Below, in pieces: positions 18,900 to 61,909 of a stretch of DNA of 64,000 nt. Both the position numbers and the translations under genes were made by a program. Under the pieces are notes generated by a model. The model saw only the letters and a list, made by a program, of their open reading frames with translations. It was not told where the DNA came from and did not search any database. Each line of letters opens with the position of its first letter. The stretch's first letter is position 1. Where the stretch lies: the sequence record MZ475898.1; one strand, written 5' to 3'.

Positions 18900-19161
18900 T
18901 TTTGTCCTCTAAAACAAATTGGAGAATACCCTCAATGTTTACAGCTTTCAGTTGCTGTCCTGTCTGCATCAACAGGCCATTGAGCACGCCGAGTAAATCA
19001 GCGCTGTGGCAATTGGGTGCAATCTGATGAACGAAAATATCGTCAGGGATATCACCAGGATTAAGCTGCCAAGCAGTACGCAAGGCAGCTCCCATGAATG
19101 ACGGTCGTTCTACCAGTTGCTTGTTCAGGAACGAACAAACATCTTCGGCGCTCAACATCAT
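18877..19161 (-). CDS. Hypothetical protein (94 aa)
   Basis: Coupled to the polymerase stop; fills the gap. Confidence 0.6.
   Translation of the reverse strand: MMLSAEDVCSFLNKQLVERPSFMGAALRTAWQLNPGDIPDDIFVHQIAPNCHSADLLGVLNGLLMQTGQQLKAVNIEGILQFVLEDKNEDLPTS
18936..18944 (-). promoter_or_regulatory. CTGTAAACA promoter-like motif
   Basis: ~37 nt upstream of the clamp gene, inside the preceding ORF. Confidence 0.45.
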
Positions 19162-22100
19162 TTCTTCGTAATCCTCTTGACTGCGTTCTTGAGGAGACTG
19201 CGGCTGATTTTGATTTTCTTCTTCGCATCACCAGCAGCTGCGGCAGCTTTCTTAGCCTTCTCTTCGGCTTCGTATGCTTCCCACTGCTTGATGTTCTTCG
19301 GAAGTTCTTTCTTCCACAGATCGATGTTCTTCTGATCTTTCTTGGTCAGAGGATTCACTTTGCCCATAGAACGAATCTTTATACCATTGGCCCACAGTTG
19401 CTTCTGCATCCACGTGGACATGAGATGGTACTGGTCTTCCATGATGCTATCAAGTTTCTTATCGACGTCGAGATCAGCTTCGCCCAACTCATCACGCTTC
19501 TGCTCAAGGCCAGCACGAATATGCTTCCTGAGTTGTTCGTAAGAGAAGTCCCAGCCTTCAACGTCTTTCTCTGATGCACCGATCTCAAAGTCGATCTCAG
19601 GCACAGACGTGAACTCAAACCCTGGATGACGTTTCTGCACAAGTTCGACCACTGCACTTGTCATGGCACGCTCAATCATATCAAGCGCGAGGAAAATCCA
19701 ATCATAGTGACAGTCAACGGTCAAGGAGTCATGTACCGATACGTTCATATCAAAGTCAGGATAGACACCGTTTGCTTTCCAGTACTCAAACTTCATGCGG
19801 TCCAGAATACGAATCGCACTCATCATCAAGTCAGAACCAAAGCCCTGAACTGGACTGTTTACCGCACGACGGTTACATGCTGCATGAACCATGTTCGCGT
19901 CTTTATGCGACTCAGGTAACATGAAGCCCCACAGGTAACGACGACGACCAACAGGCGATTCAACGAAGAAGTTCTGATGAGCAAAACTCTGAATCTTATC
20001 AAACCACTTCAAGCCAACAGGGAAACGTTTAAGGAACTTGCCTTTGATCTCTTCGATCTCACCAACTTCACGACCAGTTGACTTCGCAAGACCTTTGTTA
20101 CCCTGCTGGTAGATCAGTCCAAAGATTACTGTCTTAACCGCGTTACGTACGGACTTTGTTACGTCCATTACGTTTGGAATACCGAAGAAGTATGCGGCGT
20201 TAATCTTATGCACGTCACCTTCTGCTTCTACGCGGTGTTTAATCCACGGGTCAGGCACGGTACGATAACGATGACGCAATTCACGACCTTGTTCGAATAC
20301 GTCTGCTACGCCTTGGTCACCCGAGATGATTGACCAACCTCTAACTTCGTGCGCTGAGTAGTCGACCTTGATTAACAGGCGATTCTTACGCGCAATCAGA
20401 ATACGTTTGATCAACTTACCCATCTCGCTACGACTCGGGACCTGTTGCAAGTTCGGGTCAGATGCAGATGTACGACCTGTCACAACTTTTAGATAGCTGT
20501 ACGTCGGTCGAATCGAACGGTCATGCTTGAAGTCCTCACTCTCACCCCACAGCTTCAACAGGCTGTTAACGTAGGCGTTCTTGAGTTTGTACGCTTTACC
20601 TAACTTGGTATACAGCGAAACAAGAGGAAGTTCTTTGTACGCCTCTTGGAAGTCTTTATCGAGCTTCGCAGACTTCTTACCGTTATCACGGAGTTGCTCG
20701 CCTTCCTTTAGAGGCTTTAAGCGCATCACATCGATGAACAGGATTTGCTTATGCTCCTGCTTCGACATATCGAACTTCGTGACCTCGACTTTGCCCATAA
20801 GACCCATCTTAGGAACATTGTCGTCTCTGCATATCACGGCGTTCGCTGCTTTGACCTCAGGACTCGACATAAACTCGCGTTCAACGTTTCGAATCTCTTC
20901 ATTGATTGGACTGTTTGGCAGGTTGAGCTTAAACAGGTAATCAATGTCGGCACCAGCGCCTGTTGTTTCCAAGACACTGAACGCATGAATCTGGTCAGAG
21001 ATTTGCTCACCCACCAGCGACTCATACTTCGTGTACTTGCTATCGACGCCACGCTTAATCTGAGACAGATAGATACGGAACGGAACGATAACGTCAAGGC
21101 CCGCATACTCCTGCACAGCTTCGTCAAGGTCAGAGTCGGCGATTGTCGCACGCATCTCCTTACCAAACGATACTTCGTGATAAACAGTCGTACCGTACTG
21201 CATTGCGAGGTTGGCTAAGTTGTAATAACCTTGGCCAGTAACGGTCAACAGCGACTTCGCGTTTTCATCGTTACCAAACTCACCCGCTTGAATATCCCAG
21301 ACGTCAGCGCAATAACTACGAATGCCAAAGTTGGAGCGCATTACGTTCAGGTCAAACTTCGCATTCGTATAGATCTGAACCTTGTTGTCGTTGTCTTCGA
21401 AGTAGTCACGGAACATATCACTAATTCGACGCAACTCTTTACCGCTGAACGGACTGTCCCTGTGATAGATTGGAATCACATAGGCTGTCTCACCGTCGCA
21501 CGACAACTGCACGGTCTGAATCTTGTTTTTGATTCGATTCAGGTTCTCGGTTTCTGTATCGACTGCGACCAGCTTAGCACGCTTCATCTTTTTCAAGATT
21601 TTCTCAAGCTGCTTAACTTTGGTCACATACACCAGCTTCCAGTTACGGTTCTTACCGCAAGTCACTGGCTTAATCGCATAGCGCATACCCTTGTTGAGCC
21701 ACGGCAACATCCAACGTGCCATGTAACCCAGAGTATACGACGATGCGTTTATCACAGCAGGGTTCAGGACTGTGTGATAACTAACGTTCGGCAGATGGAT
21801 GAAGCTGTGCTTCTTGCCATCGTGCTTGAGCTTGGTGGGTATCTCAACTCCGTACCAGTGCTCATAGTGTTCTTTTGAATACTGAATCCTTTCATTGTTG
21901 AGCGCCTTGAACGGAGCTTTACCAAAAGTCAGAACGTAGTCTGGCTTGTAGTCAACAATCAGATCACGAATACGATCAGCGAATGCTTGGTCAGCATCTT
22001 CCTTGTACTGCTCAGACTTGTCATACGTCTTGAACATGTTGTAGCTAACAACGAGGAAGTTCCAATCGTCTAACGTGGTCTTTGTCGGGAACACGTCTTC

Positions 22101-22322
22101 GAGATACTGAATCTGATTCAGGAACAATTCACCTTCTGTGCTGCTAAAGATTTTACCATTACGCAGGTCATCAGTTGGCATGTGGTCAAGGACAAGTAGT
22201 GCTTTACCGCCTTTGGCGCTTTTACTAACGCCTTTTAAAATACGAACCCCGTCATAAGTCTGCACGTCGGCAAACTGTTCAGGTGGATCGAAGTCAAGAG
22301 CAACGTGCTTGATTTTCACCAT
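19158..22322 (-). CDS. polA: Family A DNA polymerase with N-terminal UDG-like domain and 3'-5' exonuclease
   Basis: Exo I VAVDTETENL, Exo II NAKFDL, TGRTSASDPNLQQVP, motif A DYSAHEVR, motif B KTVIFGLIY, NSPVQG, motif C VHDSL; N-terminal KPDYVLTFGKAPF...H.P resembles the UDG fold. Confidence 0.95.
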   Translation of the reverse strand: MVKIKHVALDFDPPEQFADVQTYDGVRILKGVSKSAKGGKALLVLDHMPTDDLRNGKIFSSTEGELFLNQIQYLEDVFPTKTTLDDWNFLVVSYNMFKTYDKSEQYKEDADQAFADRIRDLIVDYKPDYVLTFGKAPFKALNNERIQYSKEHYEHWYGVEIPTKLKHDGKKHSFIHLPNVSYHTVLNPAVINASSYTLGYMARWMLPWLNKGMRYAIKPVTCGKNRNWKLVYVTKVKQLEKILKKMKRAKLVAVDTETENLNRIKNKIQTVQLSCDGETAYVIPIYHRDSPFSGKELRRISDMFRDYFEDNDNKVQIYTNAKFDLNVMRSNFGIRSYCADVWDIQAGEFGNDENAKSLLTVTGQGYYNLANLAMQYGTTVYHEVSFGKEMRATIADSDLDEAVQEYAGLDVIVPFRIYLSQIKRGVDSKYTKYESLVGEQISDQIHAFSVLETTGAGADIDYLFKLNLPNSPINEEIRNVEREFMSSPEVKAANAVICRDDNVPKMGLMGKVEVTKFDMSKQEHKQILFIDVMRLKPLKEGEQLRDNGKKSAKLDKDFQEAYKELPLVSLYTKLGKAYKLKNAYVNSLLKLWGESEDFKHDRSIRPTYSYLKVVTGRTSASDPNLQQVPSRSEMGKLIKRILIARKNRLLIKVDYSAHEVRGWSIISGDQGVADVFEQGRELRHRYRTVPDPWIKHRVEAEGDVHKINAAYFFGIPNVMDVTKSVRNAVKTVIFGLIYQQGNKGLAKSTGREVGEIEEIKGKFLKRFPVGLKWFDKIQSFAHQNFFVESPVGRRRYLWGFMLPESHKDANMVHAACNRRAVNSPVQGFGSDLMMSAIRILDRMKFEYWKANGVYPDFDMNVSVHDSLTVDCHYDWIFLALDMIERAMTSAVVELVQKRHPGFEFTSVPEIDFEIGASEKDVEGWDFSYEQLRKHIRAGLEQKRDELGEADLDVDKKLDSIMEDQYHLMSTWMQKQLWANGIKIRSMGKVNPLTKKDQKNIDLWKKELPKNIKQWEAYEAEEKAKKAAAAAGDAKKKIKISRSLLKNAVKRITKK

Positions 22323-22361: not shown

Positions 22362-22370
22362 TATTTACAG
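22362..22370 (-). promoter_or_regulatory. CTGTAAATA promoter-like motif
   Basis: Intergenic, between a terminator and the polA start. Confidence 0.65.
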
Positions 22371-22383
22371 ATTTAGAAACGAG

Positions 22384-22423: not shown

Positions 22424-23590
22424 TTATTTTGCAGTGCCCTTGACAGCGGCAACGAACGCAGCGAACGCCTTATCGAAGTCGTTGAACGTACCCAACTGCT
22501 TAGCTTTGCGATTGTCTGGATGACCGTGAACTACTTCTTCAATGTGCTCACCGAACTTCACGCTTGCCACAGTGAATTTACCTTTGCCCATGAAATCCTT
22601 GTAGGAGAATTTCATGTCAGCGCTTTCACCGAAAACGATAGCAGTGTTCGGGCCGTCCGGAGACGAGGTATAGAAGTAGAAGGAATCGCCTGAGCCATTC
22701 TCGCCAATGCCGCCGATAGCGCGTGCAGGAACCTTTTTAATTCCAGAGAACTTAGCGATGCGCTTACCTGCCAGCACATCATCGCCGTCATCTTCATCAA
22801 ACAGGTTACCGAACTCAACCATGCTGTGAACATTTACGTTAGTCGCAGAAGACACAGGCGTCTTACCGTGGTTCTTGTTGATTGCAGCCTTGATGCCTTC
22901 AAAGTCATTGAACGCGAATGACTTATCATCAGCACCAGTGTTCAGGCTAAGAATCCATTTGCCTTTGCTTGTGCCGTTGTAGGGGTCATCAAAGGTCAGG
23001 TGAACGCTGAGCTGGCCGACATGACCGTCCATTTCCCACTCTTCGCCTGGCTTAGACTTGAACGACTCACCACGGTTATCGATACCGTAAGTCAGTTGTT
23101 CGAGACCGAGAATGTGAACCAGTTTGTTAGTGAAAGCAACGCGCTGTGCGTGCGTCATCTTACGCAGGCCCGCAACAGTAACATCACCGATAGCAGACTG
23201 ATCAACAGCAGACAACTGCTTGGCAGCACCGCGCTTAGTTGTAGCAGCAACAGCGTTACCTGCAGCTGGTTTGATTTTGATTGCACGCAGTGCATTAATG
23301 GTAGCCACCAACGTCTTCGCTTTGTACAGGTTACGCACAGCGGTGACGAGGGTTTTACCAGCAGCTTTCTTGGCGAGGCTCTGAGTAGCATCTTCGTCTT
23401 TCAGCAGCTCAAGCAGCGTAGACAACTTAGACGTGTCTAGCTCTTTGATCTTAACCAGCTCTTCCAGACGTTTGATAATCACAGCAGCGTTCTTACCAAA
23501 CAGGATGGTGGCGTTAGCCAGTTGCGGCTTAGTCGCAGATTCAGACTTAACCGTCTGCTCTTTATCCAGATTCAATTTAATCAGTGACAT
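22424..23590 (-). CDS. Putative internal head protein (MSLIKLNL...SESA family)
   Basis: N-terminus matches those of 42029-43108 and 43119-44120. Confidence 0.65.
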   Translation of the reverse strand: MSLIKLNLDKEQTVKSESATKPQLANATILFGKNAAVIIKRLEELVKIKELDTSKLSTLLELLKDEDATQSLAKKAAGKTLVTAVRNLYKAKTLVATINALRAIKIKPAAGNAVAATTKRGAAKQLSAVDQSAIGDVTVAGLRKMTHAQRVAFTNKLVHILGLEQLTYGIDNRGESFKSKPGEEWEMDGHVGQLSVHLTFDDPYNGTSKGKWILSLNTGADDKSFAFNDFEGIKAAINKNHGKTPVSSATNVNVHSMVEFGNLFDEDDGDDVLAGKRIAKFSGIKKVPARAIGGIGENGSGDSFYFYTSSPDGPNTAIVFGESADMKFSYKDFMGKGKFTVASVKFGEHIEEVVHGHPDNRKAKQLGTFNDFDKAFAAFVAAVKGTAK

Positions 23591-23599
23591 GTTAAGTCC

Positions 23600-24151
23600 T
23601 TACTTGCGGTTTTTAGTCCAGTTAGAATTTTGAGGTTTCTTTTCGCTTTGTGGCGAAGTGTTTTCCTCGTTAATCTCCTCCTCGTCCTCATCTTCGTCCT
23701 CGACGACAGGCTCAGCAGCAGGCGCGGCTTCGATCTTAGTCACTTCGAGAATTTGAGAGGGCAGTGGATTCTGATTTACAGATGAAGCGACAGCAGCAGG
23801 TTCGCTTACTGGAGGCTCTACAGCAGCAGTCGCACCCACAACATGCTCGTGGACGATCTGCTTAGTCAGCAACGCACCTTTCTCAGCGAGAATCTGATCA
23901 GCACGTTCTTGGTCCCACTTAACCCACAGGATATCGAGACCCTTATGTGCGTACATGAAACCCTGAGGCAGCTTGCCACGACCGTTGAACGGCAGACCGT
24001 TAGAAGGAACGCCTGGTTCGAACTCGTCCATCAGTTCCCACTTGCGCTTAGCCGTGATACACTTCGGTCCCCACACACCGTCACATGCACCGTCGTACAG
24101 ATCGAGCATGGTCATGATGACTTGGAGCTTCTGATAGAATTTATTCAGCAT
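23600..24151 (-). CDS. Protein with N-terminal peptidoglycan-binding-like domain and acidic tail
   Basis: LQ...L...G..DGVWGP.C..A pattern of PG_binding_1. Confidence 0.6.
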   Translation of the reverse strand: MLNKFYQKLQVIMTMLDLYDGACDGVWGPKCITAKRKWELMDEFEPGVPSNGLPFNGRGKLPQGFMYAHKGLDILWVKWDQERADQILAEKGALLTKQIVHEHVVGATAAVEPPVSEPAAVASSVNQNPLPSQILEVTKIEAAPAAEPVVEDEDEDEEEINEENTSPQSEKKPQNSNWTKNRK

Positions 24152-24413
24152 CTTTCTTTTTCTCCGGACGAGGGACGTCTTTGCCGATGATACGTTTGAA
24201 CAAACGCAGAGCCATAACAGCTTCGGTCTGAGCCATACGAGATTGCTGCTGGAACTGCATCGGATTTTCTTTCATCCAATCAACTACACGCTGCAACTCA
24301 CGCGCAGTAATCAGCTTCTGCGCCAGCTTACCTTGAAGATACACACGAACACCAGTAGTCGAAATCTTCGCTGCACTGGTGCTCTCTGCCAAATTGATCA
24401 CAATCTTAGTCAT
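24141..24413 (-). CDS. Small protein with MTKIVINLAESTSA N-terminus
   Basis: 90-aa ORF with RBS; N-terminal tag similar to the MSLIKINL...SESA family. Confidence 0.7.
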   Translation of the reverse strand: MTKIVINLAESTSAAKISTTGVRVYLQGKLAQKLITARELQRVVDWMKENPMQFQQQSRMAQTEAVMALRLFKRIIGKDVPRPEKKKDAE

Positions 24414-39314: not shown

Positions 39315-39323
39315 TATTTACAG
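39315..39323 (-). promoter_or_regulatory. CTGTAAATA promoter-like motif
   Basis: Between a terminator and the sbcD start. Confidence 0.65.
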
Positions 39324-39347
39324 AATAAAGGGCAGCCGAAGCCGCCC
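39324..39347 (-). terminator. Rho-independent terminator
   Basis: GGGCGGC-TTCG-GCTGCCC-TTTATT. Confidence 0.8.
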
Positions 39348-52650: not shown

Positions 52651-52659
52651 TATTTACAG
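52651..52659 (-). promoter_or_regulatory. CTGTAAATA promoter-like motif
   Basis: Between a terminator and the dnaX start. Confidence 0.65.
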
Positions 52660-52668
52660 ATTTTAGAC

Positions 52669-53004: not shown

Positions 53005-53013
53005 TGTTTACAG
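53005..53013 (-). promoter_or_regulatory. CTGTAAACA promoter-like motif
   Basis: Intergenic, upstream of 52965. Confidence 0.55.
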
Positions 53014-53057
53014 ATTGCTTCGGTCCGTCCTTGCGATCTAAAGTCAGAATAGTCTTA

Positions 53058-56451: not shown

Positions 56452-56607
56452 TTAGAATGCGGGAGTGTAGGTGTATTTGCGCTTCTTCAACTTCGCTGCC
56501 GCGTGTTCACGGTCTAAGTCGTCGAAGATACCTACCCGTCGGTGGTAACGAAATTTCGGATGAACGGAAATATGTTTGACGATAGCACTTACGGGTTCGG
56601 TAGGCAT
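56452..56607 (-). CDS. Small basic protein, 51 aa, not in the ORF track (MPTEPVSAIVKHISVHPKFRYHRRVGIFDDLDREHAAAKLKKRKYTYTPAF)
   Basis: GAGGTG RBS before ATG; exactly fills the gap. Confidence 0.75.
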   Translation of the reverse strand: MPTEPVSAIVKHISVHPKFRYHRRVGIFDDLDREHAAAKLKKRKYTYTPAF

Positions 56608-56615
56608 ATATCACC

Positions 56616-57101
56616 TCAGTCTGGTCTGTTCATTTGACGATGTATGTAGTCCCACATTTCGCCTTGTTCTTCTTCATCCATGTCTTCATCAGGAGGCAGC
56701 AACGGAGCTACTTCTTTCAGAAAACGTTGGCCTACGCCAGAAGTGAATTGAGACATTTCCTTGTGTCCATAGACGCGTGAAGAAATCGCCCAGGACACGT
56801 ACGGAAAAGACAGGCAAAGAGGTGAAGACTTCACAACACCATTACCGATCTCTACAAGTTGCTCTGCAATAACGTTATAGAGATCGTCAAGGGCTTTGGG
56901 ATTTTTATGCTTCGGCCATTCTTCCGTTAGAAGATTATTGACGTAGGCCTTCGGAGACTTCTCAAAGCGAGAATACTCCTCTTGATAGAACTCAGGTAAA
57001 TCAATTTTCTTCAAAGCATTGACTTTGTCCTGCAGGACAATTTCCATTTTAACCGCAGTGCGTAATCTAATCCTCAGGTCGAAAGGTCTGGTCTTAGGCA
57101 T
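56616..57101 (-). CDS. Hypothetical protein (161 aa)
   Basis: TAA-ATG abutting the polymerase-like gene. Confidence 0.7.
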   Translation of the reverse strand: MPKTRPFDLRIRLRTAVKMEIVLQDKVNALKKIDLPEFYQEEYSRFEKSPKAYVNNLLTEEWPKHKNPKALDDLYNVIAEQLVEIGNGVVKSSPLCLSFPYVSWAISSRVYGHKEMSQFTSGVGQRFLKEVAPLLPPDEDMDEEEQGEMWDYIHRQMNRPD

Positions 57102-58712
57102 TTAATCATCACCCATGAAATCAAGTGTGTCAGAGAATTTTTTCACAACGAATTTTGCTTTAGCCGACACAACGCCTTTGTCTCCCGTTTTAAGTAGAGC
57201 ACCATCATGCTCCAACGAATAGACAATCTCAACATCGCCGTTGAGGATAGCGTCGAACAACAAACTCGATTCAATGCCTGATATGCAATGACTCATGGTT
57301 CGTCGTCGGACTTTTCGAGAATGCACACACTGGTTACGTTCGAGAGTGTATTTGGCGCCAGTCTCGCACGTTAGCATCATTCCCTCCGACGTATATCGGA
57401 ACCGTCGCGAGTAGACTTCGCACAGTTGCTGCAACGCAGTGATAAACGTCAGGCAGTTAAGATTCCACGACTCAACAAAGTCATACACCTCACTCAAGTT
57501 TTTAAAGTGAGGACGCAACGCCATAACAGCACTGGACTTGGGACTCTTTGCCAGAGCGTCTGCGCTGAATAACGTGCCATAGAAACAGATCTTGACCAAT
57601 TTCTTGGTCAATTTGTTGTCAGGGTTATCGTGGTGCAACTTAGCTACAATATCATTTACAGAATGTATGTCGTTCAAGAACTCACACGCTATGCCGTTAG
57701 CCTCGAACTCCTTACGAATGATATTAAGCTGGCTGCTCTCCATATCCCAGTTATCACCAACAGTGCTGCACCGCTGTTTAAGAACGGCAGGGAACGACTG
57801 GAAGCCACCACCCTGTTCGAATAGACGACCACCAACCTTAGCAATCGTGTATGCTGGGTAATAGCGAATAACAAGAGGTGACTCTGTGACAATCTGAACA
57901 GGCCCCGATAAGATTGCTTGGAGACAGCTCATCACCTGATGATATTGCTTGAGCGCCTTGCGTGTGCCCCTGAAACTCTTAACCTGCAGGTACTCAAGAA
58001 TTGGGTCGATAGCAATTTCGTTCGGCCCTATCTTTTTCAGCACCGCCGTATAAAGTTTACGGGCTGCACGATCTCGATTAGACTTGAGGCCAAACTTAGC
58101 ATCAGGCCCCGACAGGTCATGCTTACGTGGACCAAACTCCTTGTTAGCACTCGCGCTGATCATTTCGAGTATCGTTTGACCAAATCGCTCTTGAACCGCC
58201 TTGAGAGGACTGTAGAAACGAGTCAACTCCAGCAGCTCACGATTAGACTTCGGTCGATTGGGGTACATACGGTCTAAGCACTTGCTCTTTATGCGGAACT
58301 CTCTGCTTCTCCCAGGGCTAGTAGGAGTTTTCTTCTTGTAGCGCTTGAAGTCCATGACATTAGACACCAGCCACTCAAGAGCACGCGCAAAATGCTTATC
58401 AGTACGGTTCCATTTCGGACCAACAGGCCCCCTGCTTGCATTTTCGCACCCGAATACCATAGGCAGCTCTTTTGACCCGAGCTTACGACTAAATGGTACC
58501 CAGACCGACCCAAACTTCTCAAATTTCTTGCGCTTCGTCGGATAGATAGAGGATTGAAGCACATGCCAGAAAAACAGATTGATTTGTCTGCGGTACTCAG
58601 CCTCATGTTTCTCGGGGCCGTCGTACGGACATTTGTCTACGACATTATCACGAACCCAAATCAAGGGTTCAAGCTCTTGATACGTCGGATTCTTAATCAT
58701 AAAAGAAGGCAT
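57102..58712 (-). CDS. Divergent superfamily-A / T7-RNAP-like nucleic acid polymerase
   Basis: GGRLF...GGFQS, WDMESSQL (motif A), K...K..FYG (motif B), SH.I.GIES, LEHDG (motif C) in canonical order. Confidence 0.68.
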   Translation of the reverse strand: MPSFMIKNPTYQELEPLIWVRDNVVDKCPYDGPEKHEAEYRRQINLFFWHVLQSSIYPTKRKKFEKFGSVWVPFSRKLGSKELPMVFGCENASRGPVGPKWNRTDKHFARALEWLVSNVMDFKRYKKKTPTSPGRSREFRIKSKCLDRMYPNRPKSNRELLELTRFYSPLKAVQERFGQTILEMISASANKEFGPRKHDLSGPDAKFGLKSNRDRAARKLYTAVLKKIGPNEIAIDPILEYLQVKSFRGTRKALKQYHQVMSCLQAILSGPVQIVTESPLVIRYYPAYTIAKVGGRLFEQGGGFQSFPAVLKQRCSTVGDNWDMESSQLNIIRKEFEANGIACEFLNDIHSVNDIVAKLHHDNPDNKLTKKLVKICFYGTLFSADALAKSPKSSAVMALRPHFKNLSEVYDFVESWNLNCLTFITALQQLCEVYSRRFRYTSEGMMLTCETGAKYTLERNQCVHSRKVRRRTMSHCISGIESSLLFDAILNGDVEIVYSLEHDGALLKTGDKGVVSAKAKFVVKKFSDTLDFMGDD

Positions 58713-58754
58713 TCTTTTCTCCGGAAATACTTCTTTCTCGCTCTTTCTTCTTGT

Positions 58755-58763
58755 TGTTTACAG
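58755..58763 (-). promoter_or_regulatory. CTGTAAACA promoter-like motif
   Basis: ~43 nt upstream of the polymerase-like gene. Confidence 0.55.
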
Positions 58764-58922
58764 AATCCACATCAAAGCTGCACGCTCGATAGAGCTAGGG
58801 CTACAGCCATACAACTGGATAGAAGATAGCTATGCAGCGGGCAAGCGAGCGGTGCGCTCAAGCTACGGAACAATGATATAGATACGGGGGCTTTAGGCGC
58901 ACTCCGTTTTCTCACCATCAAA

Positions 58923-58928
58923 AAATTA
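58923..58928 (-). promoter_or_regulatory. TAATTT promoter-like motif in the non-coding region
   Basis: tcTAATTTT with no convincing gene immediately downstream. Confidence 0.35.
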
Positions 58929-59061
58929 GATCCCGTCTTTAGCTAGCTATTACCCACCCGCTACAGCCCTAAACCCATGCTTAAACGCGATCATCGTTTT
59001 GAAAAAGATCTCGCTCAAACCATGTAAATTTTTTCGCGTTTTGACCCAAATTCTGTTCATT

Positions 59062-59081
59062 TTTTAACCAAAGGGTTAAAA
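59062..59081. repeat. Perfect 8-bp inverted repeat in an AT-rich tract
   Basis: TTTTAACC-AAAG-GGTTAAAA. Confidence 0.8.
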
Positions 59082-59126
59082 TCAGAGAAAAACCCGTTTA
59101 AAATCAAGGACTTTTCTCCGTTTAGA

Positions 59127-59786
59127 TTACTTTTTGCGAGAGATCTGCTGGTTCAGCTTCTTTCCGATTTGAGTAAGAACACGTTCTACCGTTTCACCGT
59201 CACGCTCTCCGATGGCCATAGCAAGGCGTTCGCCCTGTTCACGCGATAGCTCAGGCATAATCAGCTTGAGCATCTTTGATCGCGCCTTTGCAGACTTTGA
59301 TTTGCCTTTTGACAGCGATTGCGTTTCCATTTCGGCAGCAACACGGCTCATTGTGCGTTGCACGCGACGATCTGCGAATATATCACCGAAGATATTGCCA
59401 AACAGGTCCTGGAACGAGCGTCCGCCACCAAATATCTCATCCTTAGTGAAGCGCACTTCCTTTCCTAGCGCATTACGCTTAACGCTGTGCGTGCTTTCCA
59501 CTTCGTTTTGGACGCGTGCACCTTCTATGAAGTTCTCATCAGGCCGCGATTTCTTACCTTCAGCACCGGGCTTAGTGACGCCGTTACGCAGCTCAGCACG
59601 CCCCTCAACGGCCGCATCAGGGTCAAACATGTCATCAGTGTTGACGCTCTGATTAGGGTCAAAGGGGATCTTGTCTGTCAGCTTGTTTTCATCTGGCCAC
59701 GAACGAGGGATATCAGACGCCGGTTGAGGGCTATTCGTCATATCACCGTTCTTTTCGCTGTTCAGACTCACATAAATCTTGGTCAT
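59127..59786 (-). CDS. Hypothetical protein with MTKIYVSLNS N-terminus
   Basis: 219-aa ORF with AGGAG RBS. Confidence 0.72.
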   Translation of the reverse strand: MTKIYVSLNSEKNGDMTNSPQPASDIPRSWPDENKLTDKIPFDPNQSVNTDDMFDPDAAVEGRAELRNGVTKPGAEGKKSRPDENFIEGARVQNEVESTHSVKRNALGKEVRFTKDEIFGGGRSFQDLFGNIFGDIFADRRVQRTMSRVAAEMETQSLSKGKSKSAKARSKMLKLIMPELSREQGERLAMAIGERDGETVERVLTQIGKKLNQQISRKK

Positions 59787-59795
59787 TTGTTTCTC

Positions 59796-60902
59796 CTAGA
59801 GAATTTTAAAGCCCTTGAAAATGTTATACGCGTATTCTTTGCGTTGTACGGCACGGGTGGTGCACACCCATTCCCATTGATCGTTCTTTGCTGTGCGCTT
59901 CTTCGGCGCTTCCATCACTTTCAGCACGTAGTTTTTGAAAGGCAGAACCAGCAAATCTTCAGGCTCAAGCGGGCCACAACGCGCAGGCAGAACAACTGTC
60001 AGGTTACCTACAGTCAGCTCCTGATCGTAATCCAGCACGTTTGCTTCTTCGCTGATATTGCCTTTAACGTAAGGCACGCCCAGATCGAATATCATTGTGG
60101 CATGTGTGAAAGCCTCAACGCCACCGATTCTGATCGTTACGTTCTTGCCACGAAACTTATCCAGCGTTTCCGCTTTCAACTCGACCGCTACGCCGTTCAG
60201 CATCAGCATAGGACGGGGGAAAGCAGGAAGCACTTTCTCATTCAATCTGACCGAATAAGTCGCCTGCGTAAAGTATTTTGGAATAAGCTGATCGAACTCA
60301 ACGAAGCCGTCTTTGCGTACCTGACGGAACGTTGAAGGGCTGGTGGACTGATCGTATGTGTAGCCTTCAATGCGTAGCGCATGGTGCTGCATCATAACGT
60401 TGTACACGAAGCCTGTGCTAATGAATCCAGGCACGATGCCTTGACGGAAGCACACAGCACAGTTGGCGTTGTTACCGCCATCCCATTTGACGCTCATCTC
60501 TTCTTCGGTGTCGCCCATGAGATCTGCTGCGCTCAACGTTGCATTCTCGCCTTCGTCGAGGTCATCAAGGCTAACCGTTTGACGTCCACCACCAAACATG
60601 CCTTTCGACACAGTGTTCAGCTTGACGTTACCCTGAGTGCCAAGGCTTGAACGGCCAACGCTTTTCATTCCACCTAAGTTGGAATCAAAGTCGTCGTTGA
60701 CTGTTTTGTTGCAACTGCACGTCAGACCGAATTTTGCTTTCTTGAATATGATAATGTCCGTAGCGTCAACGGCTAATGCCTGTTCGACCTTGGACTTGAC
60801 CACTTCCTGAATGGAGTCGAGGCGCTGCTGCACTCGCTTTGTCTCGTAGGTCTTGTGGCGATCATATTTATTACGGGGTTTGCCACGTTCAATCCAGCTC
60901 AT
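59796..60902 (-). CDS. Putative neck/head-closure protein
   Basis: CSC...C..CF..G...GF cysteine pattern recalled from large-myovirus neck proteins; TAATTT promoter. Confidence 0.5.
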   Translation of the reverse strand: MSWIERGKPRNKYDRHKTYETKRVQQRLDSIQEVVKSKVEQALAVDATDIIIFKKAKFGLTCSCNKTVNDDFDSNLGGMKSVGRSSLGTQGNVKLNTVSKGMFGGGRQTVSLDDLDEGENATLSAADLMGDTEEEMSVKWDGGNNANCAVCFRQGIVPGFISTGFVYNVMMQHHALRIEGYTYDQSTSPSTFRQVRKDGFVEFDQLIPKYFTQATYSVRLNEKVLPAFPRPMLMLNGVAVELKAETLDKFRGKNVTIRIGGVEAFTHATMIFDLGVPYVKGNISEEANVLDYDQELTVGNLTVVLPARCGPLEPEDLLVLPFKNYVLKVMEAPKKRTAKNDQWEWVCTTRAVQRKEYAYNIFKGFKIL

Positions 60903-61897: not shown

Positions 61898-61900
61898 ATT

Positions 61901-61909
61901 CTGTAAATG
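61901..61909 (+). promoter_or_regulatory. CTGTAAATG promoter-like motif
   Basis: Plus-strand copy upstream of a plus-strand gene, so the motif flips with gene orientation. Confidence 0.6.

What the first reader, a model, noticed from the sequence alone, without database searches (positions are those of the whole stretch)
57102..58712. Second, minimal polymerase of the family-A / T7-RNAP superfamily
Seen: besides the 1054-aa PolA, this 536-aa protein has in order GGRLFEQGGGFQS, WDMESSQLNI, KKLVKICFYG, SHCISGIESSLL and LEHDGA. These correspond to T7 RNAP DxRGRxY..FNPQG, motif A Asp, motif B Lys/YG, the pre-C helix and motif C HD. There is no exonuclease or helicase domain; the ~290-aa basic N-terminal region is unassigned. 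Established: superfamily A includes PolA, T7-like RNAPs and the TV-Pol primase-polymerases. Inference: it is either a stripped-down single-subunit RNA polymerase reading one of the two phage promoter classes, or a dedicated primer-synthesising initiator acting at the adjacent non-coding region. No multisubunit RNAP or sigma factor is in this window. I cannot verify whether homologs were already noted in comparative studies; I know of no biochemical characterisation.
Basis: partly seen in the sequence, partly recalled or inferred. Interest (0 to 1): 0.8.

Follow-up and report, generated by a model that had tools for sequence, protein, structure and literature searches.

The report
Second, proofreading-less TV-Pol polymerase
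This jumbo phage of the fire-blight bacterium encodes, besides its normal replicative DNA polymerase, a small unannotated polymerase of the little-studied "TV-Pol" family, which most likely makes or starts DNA rather than RNA and is a good candidate for bench study.

Summary
Window 57102-58712 (minus strand) encodes a 536-aa protein of Erwinia phage pEa_SNUABM_25, annotated "hypothetical".

An AlphaFold model (pLDDT 88) matches only family-A DNA polymerases in the PDB: 114 hits at E<=1e-3, none of the top 50 a T7-type RNA polymerase.

A profile of the family detects the Microcystis phage Ma-LMM01 ORF beside transposases at 6e-40. Iyer et al. (2008) named that phage as a TV-Pol carrier, and bacterial relatives sit next to tyrosine and serine recombinases as that paper describes. 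It is therefore a TV-Pol: a minimal, exonuclease-free family-A polymerase with a basic N-terminal domain of no recognisable fold.

The RNA-polymerase reading is poorly supported. The phage carries its own sigma factor. The gene shares the TCTGTAAA upstream motif with PolA and the clamp loader. Phage relatives lie beside RNase H, FEN, nucleases and primase.

The "only primase" argument fails because a DnaG-type primase exists. No conserved SSB-like partner and no iterons were found.

One distinctive feature: the PolA steric-gate Glu is never present in this family (Gln or His instead).

Verdict: a new member of a known but biochemically unexplored family; moderately interesting.

The parts
57102..58712 (-). 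Gene for the 536-aa TV-Pol-type family-A polymerase (pEaSNUABM25_00219)
   Evidence: ORF; 100% match to MZ475898.1; AF2 pLDDT 88.1 / pTM 0.84; Foldseek matches PolA DNA polymerases only; member of PHROG 30690, unknown function
58263..58712 (-). N-terminal basic domain, residues 1-150 (FFWH 47-50, VPF 72-74, SREFRI 135-140), conserved in phage and bacterial members and in the Ma-LMM01 TV-Pol
   Evidence: Independent AF2 model pLDDT 92.6 / pTM 0.87. No significant PDB fold match; best E 1.9, faint winged-helix hits. pI 9.9. Consensus retained in A2/A3. The Ma-LMM01 ORF matches profile positions 6-375
57798..57833 (-). Beta-hairpin motif GGRLFEQGGGFQ (residues 294-305), equivalent to PolA TGRxSSxxPNLQ; R296 corresponds to Klenow R668 and Q305 to Q677
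   Evidence: Invariant; aligned to R617/Q627 of the phage PolA
57723..57752 (-). Motif A, NWDMESSQLN (321-330): catalytic D323; Q328 at the steric-gate (Klenow E710) position
   Evidence: D323 171/172. Position 328 is Q in 154, H in 14, N in 2, and never E. Strand 320-324 followed by helix 327-338 in the model. The equivalence to D705/E710 rests on topology and spacing, because hhalign mis-gapped this motif
57564..57605 (-). O-helix / motif B (370-383): K370, K374, Y378, F382
   Evidence: K374 173/173; helix 370-383; aligned to K730/F734/Y738 of PolA
57258..57305 (-). Pre-C helix (470-485), R470...H475..S478-G479-x-E481, equivalent to PolA RxxxNxPxQG
   Evidence: G479 165/166 and E481 166/166; aligned to R818...Q826-G827
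57195..57218 (-). Motif C hairpin SLEHDGAL (499-506): H502, catalytic D503, G504
   Evidence: D503 and G504 164/164; strands 494-500 and 504-509; aligned to H864-D865-S866 of PolA; the same HDGAL occurs in the Ma-LMM01 TV-Pol
58757..58764 (-). TCTGTAAA promoter-like motif 45 nt upstream of the ATG, shared with PolA, clamp loader and other genes
   Evidence: 8 copies against 2.47 expected; 0 of 100 shuffles reach 8. Six copies lie 29-45 nt before start codons, including PolA (22322) and clamp loader (52614). CTGTAAA is conserved before the gene in four genera
58713..59126 (.). 414-bp non-coding gap: terminator-like hairpin plus T-run of the upstream operon (59080-59123), conserved block AAAAATTTACATGGTTT (around 59017-59033), then a poorly conserved spacer
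   Evidence: No iteron array, no Rfam match, no consensus sigma-70 promoter on the gene's strand
56616..57101 (-). 161-aa ORF abutting the 3' end: a hypervariable slot, not a conserved partner
   Evidence: Only a self-hit in 5.8 billion proteins. No similarity to the proteins in the same position in Alexandra, Y3/Yen9-02 or JA11. No PHROG

Best explanation
The gene encodes a catalytically competent TV-Pol-type minimal family-A polymerase. It has a basic N-terminal domain (residues 1-150) fused to a thumb-palm-fingers core, and no proofreading or 5'-nuclease domain.

Most likely it is a DNA-templated DNA polymerase of low fidelity and low processivity. It would initiate and briefly extend DNA chains (a primase-polymerase) on single-stranded or recombination/replication intermediates of the phage genome, with the N-terminal domain supplying in cis the template grip that the MP protein supplies in trans to CcPol. 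It is expressed with the replication genes and hands over to the clamp-bound replicative PolA. It is not the phage's transcriptase.

Shown: the fold, the conserved active site, family membership, the genomic contexts and the shared upstream motif. Inferred: DNA rather than RNA product (about 0.75), de novo priming (about 0.4), and DNA binding by the N-terminal domain.
For: - Fold: the AF2 model (pLDDT 88.1) gives 114 PDB hits at E<=1e-3, and all of the top 50 are family-A DNA polymerases (apPOL, Taq, Klenow, Bst, Pol theta, Pol nu).
- Virophage and giant-virus 'DNA replication / helicase-primase-polymerase' proteins score ahead of ordinary phage PolA in BFVD.
- Active site: R296, D323, K374, G479, E481, H502, D503 and G504 are invariant in 64 sequences at 15-20% identity and in about 165-173 of 175 members. 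They align in the same order with the phage's PolA motifs.
- TV-Pol membership: the family HMM hits Ma-LMM01 ORF MAP_030, which lies beside transposases, at 6.2e-40. The jumbo-phage-only HMM hits it at 2.9e-7, and it carries the same HDGAL. Bacterial relatives lie next to tyrosine integrases (10 loci) and serine resolvases (7 loci), as PMC2579912 describes.
- Precedent: the TV-Pol CcPol with MP is a dNTP-using primase-polymerase (PMC7581432, PMC10061031). Small integrative elements whose only replication-type gene is this polymerase need an initiator rather than a gap filler (inference).
- Replication link in phages: TCTGTAAA lies 29-45 nt upstream of this gene, PolA and the clamp loader. The neighbourhood holds an HJ resolvase, DnaG primase, clamp loader, SbcC, SSB and UvsX.
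- Relatives in other phages lie beside RNase H/UvrD/ligase, FEN/DHH and PD-(D/E)XK/DnaG genes.
- Conservation: syntenic in four genera, forming a monophyletic clade (SH 0.989) inside a phage-type superclade (SH 0.996).
Against: - The phage already has a DnaG-type primase (PHROG 47, 8e-28), so a second priming activity is not required.
- There is no conserved OB-fold/SSB partner and no adjacent helicase.
- No member of this branch has been assayed. CcPol, the only assayed TV-Pol, keeps the steric-gate Glu whereas this family never does (PMC7581432), so its biochemistry may not transfer.
- Sequence-level similarity to PolA is marginal (hhalign E 0.034; no PDB sequence hits).
- Foldseek TM-scores are modest (0.32-0.38).
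- The protein evolves much faster (16-51% identity) than PolA (76-86%) across the same genera. That fits an accessory role.
- The model's coordinates are not exposed, so the Asp-Asp juxtaposition could not be measured.
Confidence: 0.45

Rival explanations
1. It is a primer-dependent auxiliary DNA polymerase for gap filling, Okazaki-fragment maturation, base-excision repair or lesion bypass. It would act as a free-standing 'Pol I polymerase domain' working with separately encoded nucleases, or as a Pol theta/nu-like error-tolerant enzyme. One possible role is dealing with abasic sites produced by the UDG domain of the replicative PolA.
For: - Phage relatives are adjacent to RNase H, ligase and UvrD, to a 5'-3' exonuclease and a DHH phosphoesterase, and to a PD-(D/E)XK nuclease.
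- Here the gene lies close to an HJ resolvase and, further off, SbcC, SSB and UvsX.
- It has no proofreading domain.
- Q328 and F382 replace the E710-Y766 pair, and E710Q in Klenow is a mutator with weak dNTP binding (PMC3715850).
- Pol theta and Pol nu are among the structural matches.
- The PolA of this phage group is reported to carry a UDG domain (PMC7412058).
- CcPol alone is only a primer-dependent polymerase (PMC7581432).
Against: - The bacterial branch sits on small integrase/resolvase elements that would gain nothing from a gap-filling polymerase, because the host has Pol I.
- The conserved basic N-terminal domain is not explained by this role.
- The neighbours differ between phage lineages, so no specific nuclease partner is conserved.
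Confidence: 0.3
2. It uses ribonucleotides. It would be either a minimal single-subunit RNA polymerase for a class of phage promoters or an A-family primase that makes RNA primers.
For: - The steric-gate Glu that excludes rNTPs in PolA is absent from all about 172 members (Q, H or N instead).
- Motif C lacks the Glu of HDE, as in T7 RNAP.
- His475 is invariant in the phage clade, near the position of T7 RNAP H784.
- Iyer et al. recovered T7-like RNAPs in iterated searches from TV-Pols (PMC2579912).
Against: - No T7-type RNAP is among the top 50 structural matches.
- The protein is 536 aa and lacks the promoter-binding N-terminal domain and specificity loop of T7-type enzymes. This comparison is from general knowledge; only the lack of a fold match was tested.
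- The O-helix position of T7 Y639, whose OH reads the 2'-OH, is Phe or Met here.
- Gln is isosteric with Glu, so steric exclusion may persist.
- HDS also occurs in the phage's replicative PolA.
- The phage has a sigma factor, and the group is described as using host RNAP.
- The gene carries the same upstream motif as PolA and the clamp loader instead of standing apart from it.
Confidence: 0.1
3. It is a relic of a TV-Pol mobile element captured by an ancestor of these phages. It would be kept for the element's own benefit, or for a non-catalytic or conflict-related role, and would not be part of phage replication.
For: - The family is typical of mobile elements, including one inserted in phage Ma-LMM01 (PMC2579912).
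- Its rate of change is high compared with its neighbours: 33-51% identity against 56-86% for the flanking 368-aa gene and the peptidase.
- The gene slot immediately downstream is hypervariable.
Against: - No integrase, resolvase or transposase lies nearby in any of the four phage genera.
- Synteny is strict and the clade is monophyletic.
- All catalytic residues are invariant.
- It shares a promoter-like motif with replication genes.
Confidence: 0.05

Closest known systems
TV-Pol family (Iyer, Abhiman and Aravind 2008, PMC2579912), in particular the subset found with resolvase, integrase or transposase genes, and the copy in Microcystis phage Ma-LMM01
   Same: - Standalone 400-600 aa protein.
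- Minimal thumb, beta-hairpin Arg, two-Asp palm, and fingers with a conserved Lys.
- Never linked to a nuclease domain.
- Found in viruses and integrative elements.
- Ma-LMM01 ORF MAP_030 is detected by the family profile (6e-40) over the N-terminal domain plus core, and shares HDGAL.
- Bacterial members are flanked by tyrosine and serine recombinases.
   Different: - Here it is a vertically inherited, syntenic gene of 250-267-kb jumbo phages that already have a full replisome (PolA, clamp, clamp loader, DnaG primase). It is not part of a mobile element.
- There is no D5-type helicase nearby.
- The Arg of RxxxK is K370 here and is variable across the family (V, K, R or E).
- I could not confirm that the N-terminal domain equals the paper's 'TV-PolN', which was predicted all-helical; the model here is alpha/beta.
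CcPol-MP primase-polymerase of SCCmec and the PolA-SSB pairs of Bacillota (PMC7581432, PMC10061031)
   Same: An exonuclease-free family-A polymerase domain on a mobile element, counted among TV-Pols. It is the only biochemical precedent: a dNTP-dependent primer-extending polymerase that primes de novo once ssDNA binding is supplied.
   Different: - CcPol keeps E710 and F762. This family has Q or H, never E, at the first position and mostly Y at the second.
- There is no conserved small gene downstream and no helicase gene.
- A fused, conserved basic N-terminal domain is present instead.
- A different host range: Pseudomonadota phages and Cyanobacteria, Rhodothermales and others, not Bacillota.
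Bacterial and organellar family-A DNA polymerases (Klenow, Taq, Bst, apicoplast Pol, Pol theta, Pol nu)
   Same: These are the best structural matches (E 1e-5, prob 1.0, 300-390 aligned columns). The order of motifs is the same: TGR..Q, motif A Asp, O-helix Lys, RxxxNxxxQG helix and motif C HD.
   Different: - 10-14% identity, and no sequence-level hit to any PDB chain.
- No 3'-5' or 5'-3' exonuclease.
- A short thumb.
- The E710-Y766 pair, called universally conserved in the family (PMC3715850), is replaced.
- E883 is replaced by Gly.
- Extra invariant residues (N321, E481) have no PolA counterpart.
T7-type single-subunit RNA polymerases
   Same: The same superfamily palm and fingers; HD without the following Glu.
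   Different: Not among the top 50 structural matches. The protein is about 350 aa shorter, has no recognisable promoter-binding domain, and has Phe at the Y639 position and Gln rather than Gly at the G542 position.
piPolB of pipolins (analogy only; cited in PMC10061031)
   Same: A replicative-family polymerase fold on integrative elements that has acquired primer-independent DNA synthesis.
   Different: Family B rather than family A; no homology was tested here.

Membership tests
Family-A (Pol I-like) polymerase superfamily | Right-hand thumb/palm/fingers fold of the Pol I polymerase domain | tested here: met
   Foldseek: 114 PDB hits at E<=1e-3, and the top 50 are all family-A DNA polymerases, prob 1.00, using a model with pLDDT 88.1
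Family-A (Pol I-like) polymerase superfamily | Two catalytic Asp (motif A and motif C) and the O-helix Lys | tested here: met
   D323, D503 and K374 are invariant. D503 and K374 align to PolA D865 and K730. D323 is assigned by topology
Family-A (Pol I-like) polymerase superfamily | The two Asp juxtaposed in the three-dimensional model | not testable with these tools
   Model coordinates are not returned. Only secondary structure is available (strand 320-324; hairpin 494-509), and it is consistent with juxtaposition
Family-A (Pol I-like) polymerase superfamily | Steric-gate Glu (Klenow E710) paired with O-helix Tyr (Y766), as in DNA-polymerase members | tested here: not met
   Position 328 is Q in 154, H in 14, N in 2, never E. 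Position 382 is F in 88, M in 61, Y in 11
TV-Pol (PMC2579912) | A profile of the family recovers a member named in the defining paper | tested here: met
   Ma-LMM01 ORF 22746-24266, beside transposases: A2 HMM 6.2e-40, A3 2.6e-37, A1 2.9e-7. Only the first 50 kb of that genome was searched, and the identity of this ORF with the paper's entry is inferred from its context
TV-Pol (PMC2579912) | Minimal core: thumb, beta-hairpin with an absolutely conserved Arg, two Asp, and fingers with RxxxK | tested here: inconclusive
   Arg (R296), both Asp and the Lys are invariant. The residue four positions before the Lys is K here but V, K, R or E across the family
TV-Pol (PMC2579912) | No fusion or linkage to nuclease domains; occurrence in viruses and in elements with resolvase, integrase or transposase | tested here: met
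   No exonuclease domain. Bacterial loci carry tyrosine recombinase (cluster c1, 10 loci) and serine recombinase (c2, 7 loci) genes
TV-Pol (PMC2579912) | Primase plus polymerase activity | not testable with these tools
   This was predicted, not shown, in the defining paper. It has been shown only for CcPol-MP (PMC7581432)
CcPol-MP / PolA-SSB primases (PMC10061031) | A conserved small OB-fold SSB gene directly downstream of the polymerase gene | tested here: not met
   The downstream ORFs of four genera are unrelated to one another, and the 161-aa ORF has no homolog.
CcPol-MP / PolA-SSB primases (PMC10061031) | A helicase gene in the same operon | tested here: not met
   None in the operon
CcPol-MP / PolA-SSB primases (PMC10061031) | Retention of Pol I residues E710 and F762 | tested here: not met
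   Q328 and Y378
T7-type single-subunit RNA polymerase | Closest structural neighbours are T7/mitochondrial RNAPs, with a promoter-binding N-terminal domain | tested here: not met
   None in the top 50 PDB matches. The N-terminal domain has no significant fold match
T7-type single-subunit RNA polymerase | An O-helix Tyr that hydrogen-bonds the 2'-OH (Y639), with Gly at the steric-gate position | tested here: not met
   F382 and Q328. The equivalences to T7 numbering come from established PolA/T7 alignments and were not recomputed here

The most novel reading that the evidence does not exclude
This large TV-Pol branch (at least 406 clusters at 50% identity) never carries the steric-gate Glu and lacks the E710-Y766 pair. 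It may therefore be a natural family-A enzyme with relaxed or inverted sugar selectivity that starts chains de novo using its fused basic N-terminal domain. In that case it would be an RNA- or mixed-primer-making A-family primase, or the smallest known single-subunit RNA polymerase, in jumbo phages and bacterial integrative elements alike.
Probability: 0.12. Interest if true: 0.85.

Novelty: new member of a known kind. Interest (0 to 1): 0.45.

Why it matters
TV-Pols were predicted in 2008 to be primase-polymerases, yet only one atypical member (CcPol) has been tested.

This work shows that a well-populated, unannotated branch is a conserved gene of a whole group of jumbo phages that already own a complete replisome. 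All its members are 'hypothetical' in GenBank, NCBIfam and PADLOC, and two PHROGs have unknown function. The branch has a fused N-terminal domain of unknown fold and a systematic replacement of the residue pair that enforces sugar choice and fidelity in every studied family-A DNA polymerase.

That gives a tractable model for two questions. The phages are culturable and the protein is soluble-sized at 61 kDa. How can a Pol I fold start chains without a primer? And why does a phage keep a second, fast-evolving, error-prone polymerase?

It also corrects annotation for about 40 phage genomes, some of them used in fire-blight and soft-rot biocontrol.

Tried and rejected
- Sequence searches against PDB chains with the single protein and with two profiles gave nothing. 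The ribosomal L10 hits at E about 0.07 are spurious.
- NCBIfam and PADLOC gave no family.
- hhalign of the orthologue profile against the phage PolA gave nothing. The broad profile against single PolA gave E 0.079, and against a 21-sequence PolA profile E 0.034. That alignment runs in the same order but is statistically marginal, and motif A is mis-gapped.
- I rejected 'it is the missing primase'. Y3 gp227 and its SNUABM_25 orthologue form a DnaG-type primase.
- I rejected a conserved CcPol-MP-like partner. The 161-aa downstream ORF has no homolog and the slot is non-orthologous between genera.
- I rejected an origin or iteron function for the gap 58713-59126. The conserved TTTACATGGTTT block is not enriched elsewhere in the window.
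- I rejected a vestigial exonuclease in the N-terminus.
- The 33-sequence alignment was too divergent for the genome scan, so a closer 8-sequence set was used.
- tblastn from a bacterial member did not reach Ma-LMM01. A local HMM search did.
- The supplement of the TV-Pol paper is not held as text, so I could not compare with its TV-PolN alignment.
- I could not measure the Asp-Asp distance or view Foldseek residue alignments, because the tools do not expose them.
Full report
WHAT IS THERE

The window is part of Erwinia phage pEa_SNUABM_25, a 263-kb jumbo phage (MZ475898.1). Window coordinate equals record coordinate minus 124000.

The ORF 57102-58712 on the minus strand encodes 536 aa and is annotated 'hypothetical protein'. 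It falls in PHROG 30690 (unknown function, E 6e-102) and matches nothing in NCBIfam, PADLOC or PDB sequences.

Forty-one phage records carry a full-length homolog, all 'hypothetical': Erwinia 32, Dickeya 8, Yersinia 1. They are invariant or nearly so in 26 orthologs that go down to 35% identity.

FOLD

An AlphaFold2 model built on that alignment is confident (pLDDT 88.1, pTM 0.84). Foldseek against the PDB gives 114 matches at E<=1e-3. Every one of the top 50 is a family-A DNA polymerase: apicoplast Pol, Taq/KlenTaq, Klenow, Bst, Pol theta and Pol nu. They align over 300-390 columns at 10-14% identity. No T7-type RNA polymerase appears among them.

In the viral library the orthologs come first, including a 16%-identical Yoloswag protein. 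Virophage and giant-virus 'DNA replication' or 'helicase/primase/polymerase' proteins then come ahead of ordinary phage PolA.

The secondary-structure order is that of the Pol I palm and fingers:
- hairpin with R296;
- strand ending in D323;
- helix;
- O-helix 370-383 with K374;
- long helix 466-491;
- hairpin 494-509 with H502-D503 at the turn.

A profile-profile alignment with 21 PolA sequences related to the phage's own PolA is statistically marginal (E 0.034) but runs in the same order over 212 columns. It pairs:
- R296 with TGR R617;
- Q305 with PNLQ Q627;
- K374, Y378 and F382 with K730, F734 and Y738;
- R470...S478-G479 with R818...Q826-G827;
- H502-D503-G504 with H864-D865-S866.

The phage's replicative PolA has HDS, so 'HDG' is not an RNA-polymerase signature.

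THE FAMILY

An exhaustive HMMER search with the orthologue profile finds 406 clusters at 50% identity with E<=1e-3. Most are 450-600 aa.

In 64 diverse members, R296, D323, K374, G479, E481, H502, D503 and G504 are invariant. Over about 175 members the counts are 171/171, 171/172, 173/173, 165/166, 166/166, 153/164, 164/164 and 164/164. None of these proteins has a name in NCBIfam or PADLOC, and both PHROGs that cover them are of unknown function.

Members from bacterial genomes occur in Nostoc and other Cyanobacteria, Melainabacteria, Rhodothermales, Blastocatellia, Labilithrix, SAR324, Bacteroidota and Sumerlaeia. They lie in small islands with a tyrosine recombinase (10 loci) and/or a serine recombinase (7 loci), sometimes with ParA or RadC.

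This is the context that Iyer, Abhiman and Aravind (PMC2579912) gave for one subset of their TV-Pol family. I tested membership directly. That paper names Microcystis phage Ma-LMM01 as a carrier of a TV-Pol element. In that phage, the 506-aa ORF beside two transposases is hit by the broad family HMM at 6.2e-40 and by the jumbo-phage-only HMM at 2.9e-7. The hit covers the N-terminal domain as well as the core, and the ORF has the same HDGAL motif.

I therefore file the protein as a TV-Pol. Two caveats apply. Only the first 50 kb of Ma-LMM01 was searched. The paper's alignments were not available.

A FastTree phylogeny puts the 27 Erwinia/Dickeya/Yersinia representatives in one clade (SH-like 0.989). 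That clade lies inside a 51-tip superclade (0.996) whose three sampled contexts are all phage-like. All 20 bacterial loci and the three integrase-linked elements fall in the other part of the tree.

N-TERMINAL REGION

Residues 1-290 are basic (pI 9.97), while the catalytic part is neutral. Residues 1-150 fold confidently on their own (pLDDT 92.6). They have no significant match in the PDB; the best E is 1.9, with only faint winged-helix resemblances. So the region is not a decayed exonuclease.

Its signature (FxxH ... VPxP ... CRxY) is shared by the bacterial members and by Ma-LMM01. The remaining residues 150-290 are best read as the N-terminal palm plus a short two-helix thumb; this is an inference from the length of the Foldseek alignments.

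CONTEXT IN THE PHAGE

The gene order is conserved in Alexandravirus, Sasquatchvirus (Y3), Salmondvirus (JA11) and Yersinia phage fHe-Yen9-02. It runs:
- HJ resolvase (divergent);
- the 368-aa and 219-aa genes;
- a 390-860-nt gap;
- the polymerase;
- a variable gene;
- a small conserved protein;
- further downstream, a peptidase.

Further upstream lie a DnaG-type primase (PHROG 47, 8e-28), a sigma factor, SSB and UvsX. Downstream lie the clamp loader and SbcC. SNUABM_25 has an 86%-identical sigma-factor orthologue outside the window. The PaBG paper describes the group as having sigma-70-like factors, a PolA and Pol III beta and gamma subunits.

The gap contains a hairpin plus T-run after the upstream operon, one conserved block, a poorly conserved spacer and CTGTAAA 25-50 nt before the ATG in all four genera. 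There are no iterons and no Rfam match.

TCTGTAAA is enriched in the window: 8 observed against 2.5 expected, and 0 of 100 shuffles reach 8. Six copies lie 29-45 nt upstream of start codons, including those of PolA, the clamp loader and this gene. The gene therefore seems to be co-regulated with replication genes rather than to define a promoter class of its own.

The ORF that abuts its 3' end (161 aa) is not a conserved partner. It has no homolog at all, and the corresponding proteins in other genera are unrelated.

In other large phages the family member lies next to:
- RNase H, a UvrD helicase and a ligase (Vibrio phage GR11A);
- a 5'-3' exonuclease and a DHH protein;
- a PD-(D/E)XK nuclease and a DnaG primase.

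WHAT IT PROBABLY DOES

Shown: a family-A polymerase fold, a complete and strongly conserved catalytic set, no nuclease domain, TV-Pol membership, and replication/repair neighbourhoods.

The only tested TV-Pol, CcPol, is a dNTP-preferring polymerase that primes de novo when the SSB-like MP supplies ssDNA binding (PMC7581432, PMC10061031). For the integrase/resolvase elements, an initiator makes biological sense and a gap filler does not.

I therefore favour (0.45) a low-fidelity DNA primase-polymerase whose fused basic N-terminal domain replaces MP. In the phage it would act on replication or recombination intermediates.

The main rival (0.30) is a primer-dependent repair, gap-filling or bypass polymerase. 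The nuclease, RNase H and ligase neighbours in other phages suggest this, and so does the presence of a separate DnaG primase.

The RNA-polymerase or NTP-using reading (0.10) rests mainly on one real peculiarity. The position of Klenow E710 is never Glu in this family (Q 154, H 14, N 2), and Y766 is Phe or Met. According to PMC3715850 that pair is universally conserved in A-family polymerases. E710Q is a mutator that binds the correct dNTP about 280-fold more weakly overall, while Y766F is near wild type. CcPol, by contrast, keeps E710 and F762. This argues for a specialised, error-prone enzyme and leaves sugar selectivity open. Everything else speaks against a transcriptase.

A relic or selfish role (0.05) fits the fast evolution: 16-51% identity against 76-86% for PolA across the same genera. 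It does not fit the invariant active site or the strict synteny.

NOVELTY

The family has been known since 2008, so this is a new member (a new phage clade) of a known kind. I found no mention of it in papers on these phages, in a 2024 survey of phage polymerases, in a 2026 survey of bacterial polymerases or in a 2026 jumbo-phage review. The branch it belongs to has no biochemistry at all.

Noticed in passing
window 22364-22371, 39317-39324, 52653-52660, 53007-53014, 58757-58764 (all -), 61900-61907 (+): TCTGTAAA(T/C)A lies 29-45 nt upstream of the start codons of PolA, a 359-aa gene, the clamp loader, a 69-aa gene, the TV-Pol gene and a 219-aa plus-strand gene. It looks like a phage promoter class for replication-period genes. 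A seventh copy (57655-57662) lies inside the TV-Pol gene.
   Followed up: partly
window 56616-57101 (-): The 161-aa ORF with an acidic C-terminal stretch has no homolog in 5.8 billion proteins. The same slot in Alexandra, Y3/Yen9-02 and JA11 holds unrelated genes of 165, 174 and 362 aa. It is a hypervariable 'cassette' position inside an otherwise syntenic operon.
   Followed up: partly
L031:4483-6147 (Dickeya phage JA11, NC_048077.1): The TV-Pol gene of JA11 is annotated from an internal start (405 aa). The frame is open about 150 codons further upstream and encodes the conserved N-terminal domain, so the annotation is truncated. BFVD entries for JA11 (405 aa) and JA13 (284 aa) look similarly shortened.
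   Followed up: yes
window 19158-22322 (-): The 1054-aa replicative PolA has VHDS rather than HDE at motif C, and this is invariant in 21 relatives. [quoted passage not shown] A 2026 paper links UDG-fused PolAs to phages with hypermodified thymidine. Whether this phage belongs to that subfamily or has modified DNA was not checked.
   Followed up: no
window 59017-59033 and 59080-59123: There is a conserved block AAAAATTTACATGGTTT and a hairpin plus T-run directly after the stop of the 219-aa gene. Both are conserved in four genera while the rest of the gap is not. They are probably a terminator and a regulatory or promoter element.
   Followed up: partly
window 56452-56607 (-): A small 51-aa protein, two genes downstream of the polymerase, is conserved in SNUABM_25, Alexandra, Y3 and Yen9-02 (54-67% identity over about 40 aa) despite the variable genes around it. 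It might be a partner of the polymerase.
   Followed up: no
L029:22746-24266 (Microcystis phage Ma-LMM01): The Ma-LMM01 TV-Pol keeps the N-terminal domain, the GR hairpin, motif A, the O-helix Lys and HDGAL. It has only about 30 residues between motif B and motif C, where the family has about 120, so the QGxE helix is missing. It may be a decayed copy.
   Followed up: partly
L009-L011, L016, L019 (Nostoc and other cyanobacterial loci): In cyanobacterial elements a roughly 250-aa gene lies directly upstream of the TV-Pol gene and gives a weak Rha-family phage-regulator hit (below cut-off). This recalls the Bro-N/KilA-C gene that Iyer et al. describe in the Brucella element. In L002 and L005 an unrelated 440-452-aa gene of unknown function is upstream instead.
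   Followed up: partly
window 59796-60902 and 59127-59786 (-): The two genes upstream (368 aa, PHROG 21298; 219 aa, PHROG 31583) have unknown function. They are much better conserved across genera (57-77% and 36-72%) than the polymerase.
   Followed up: no
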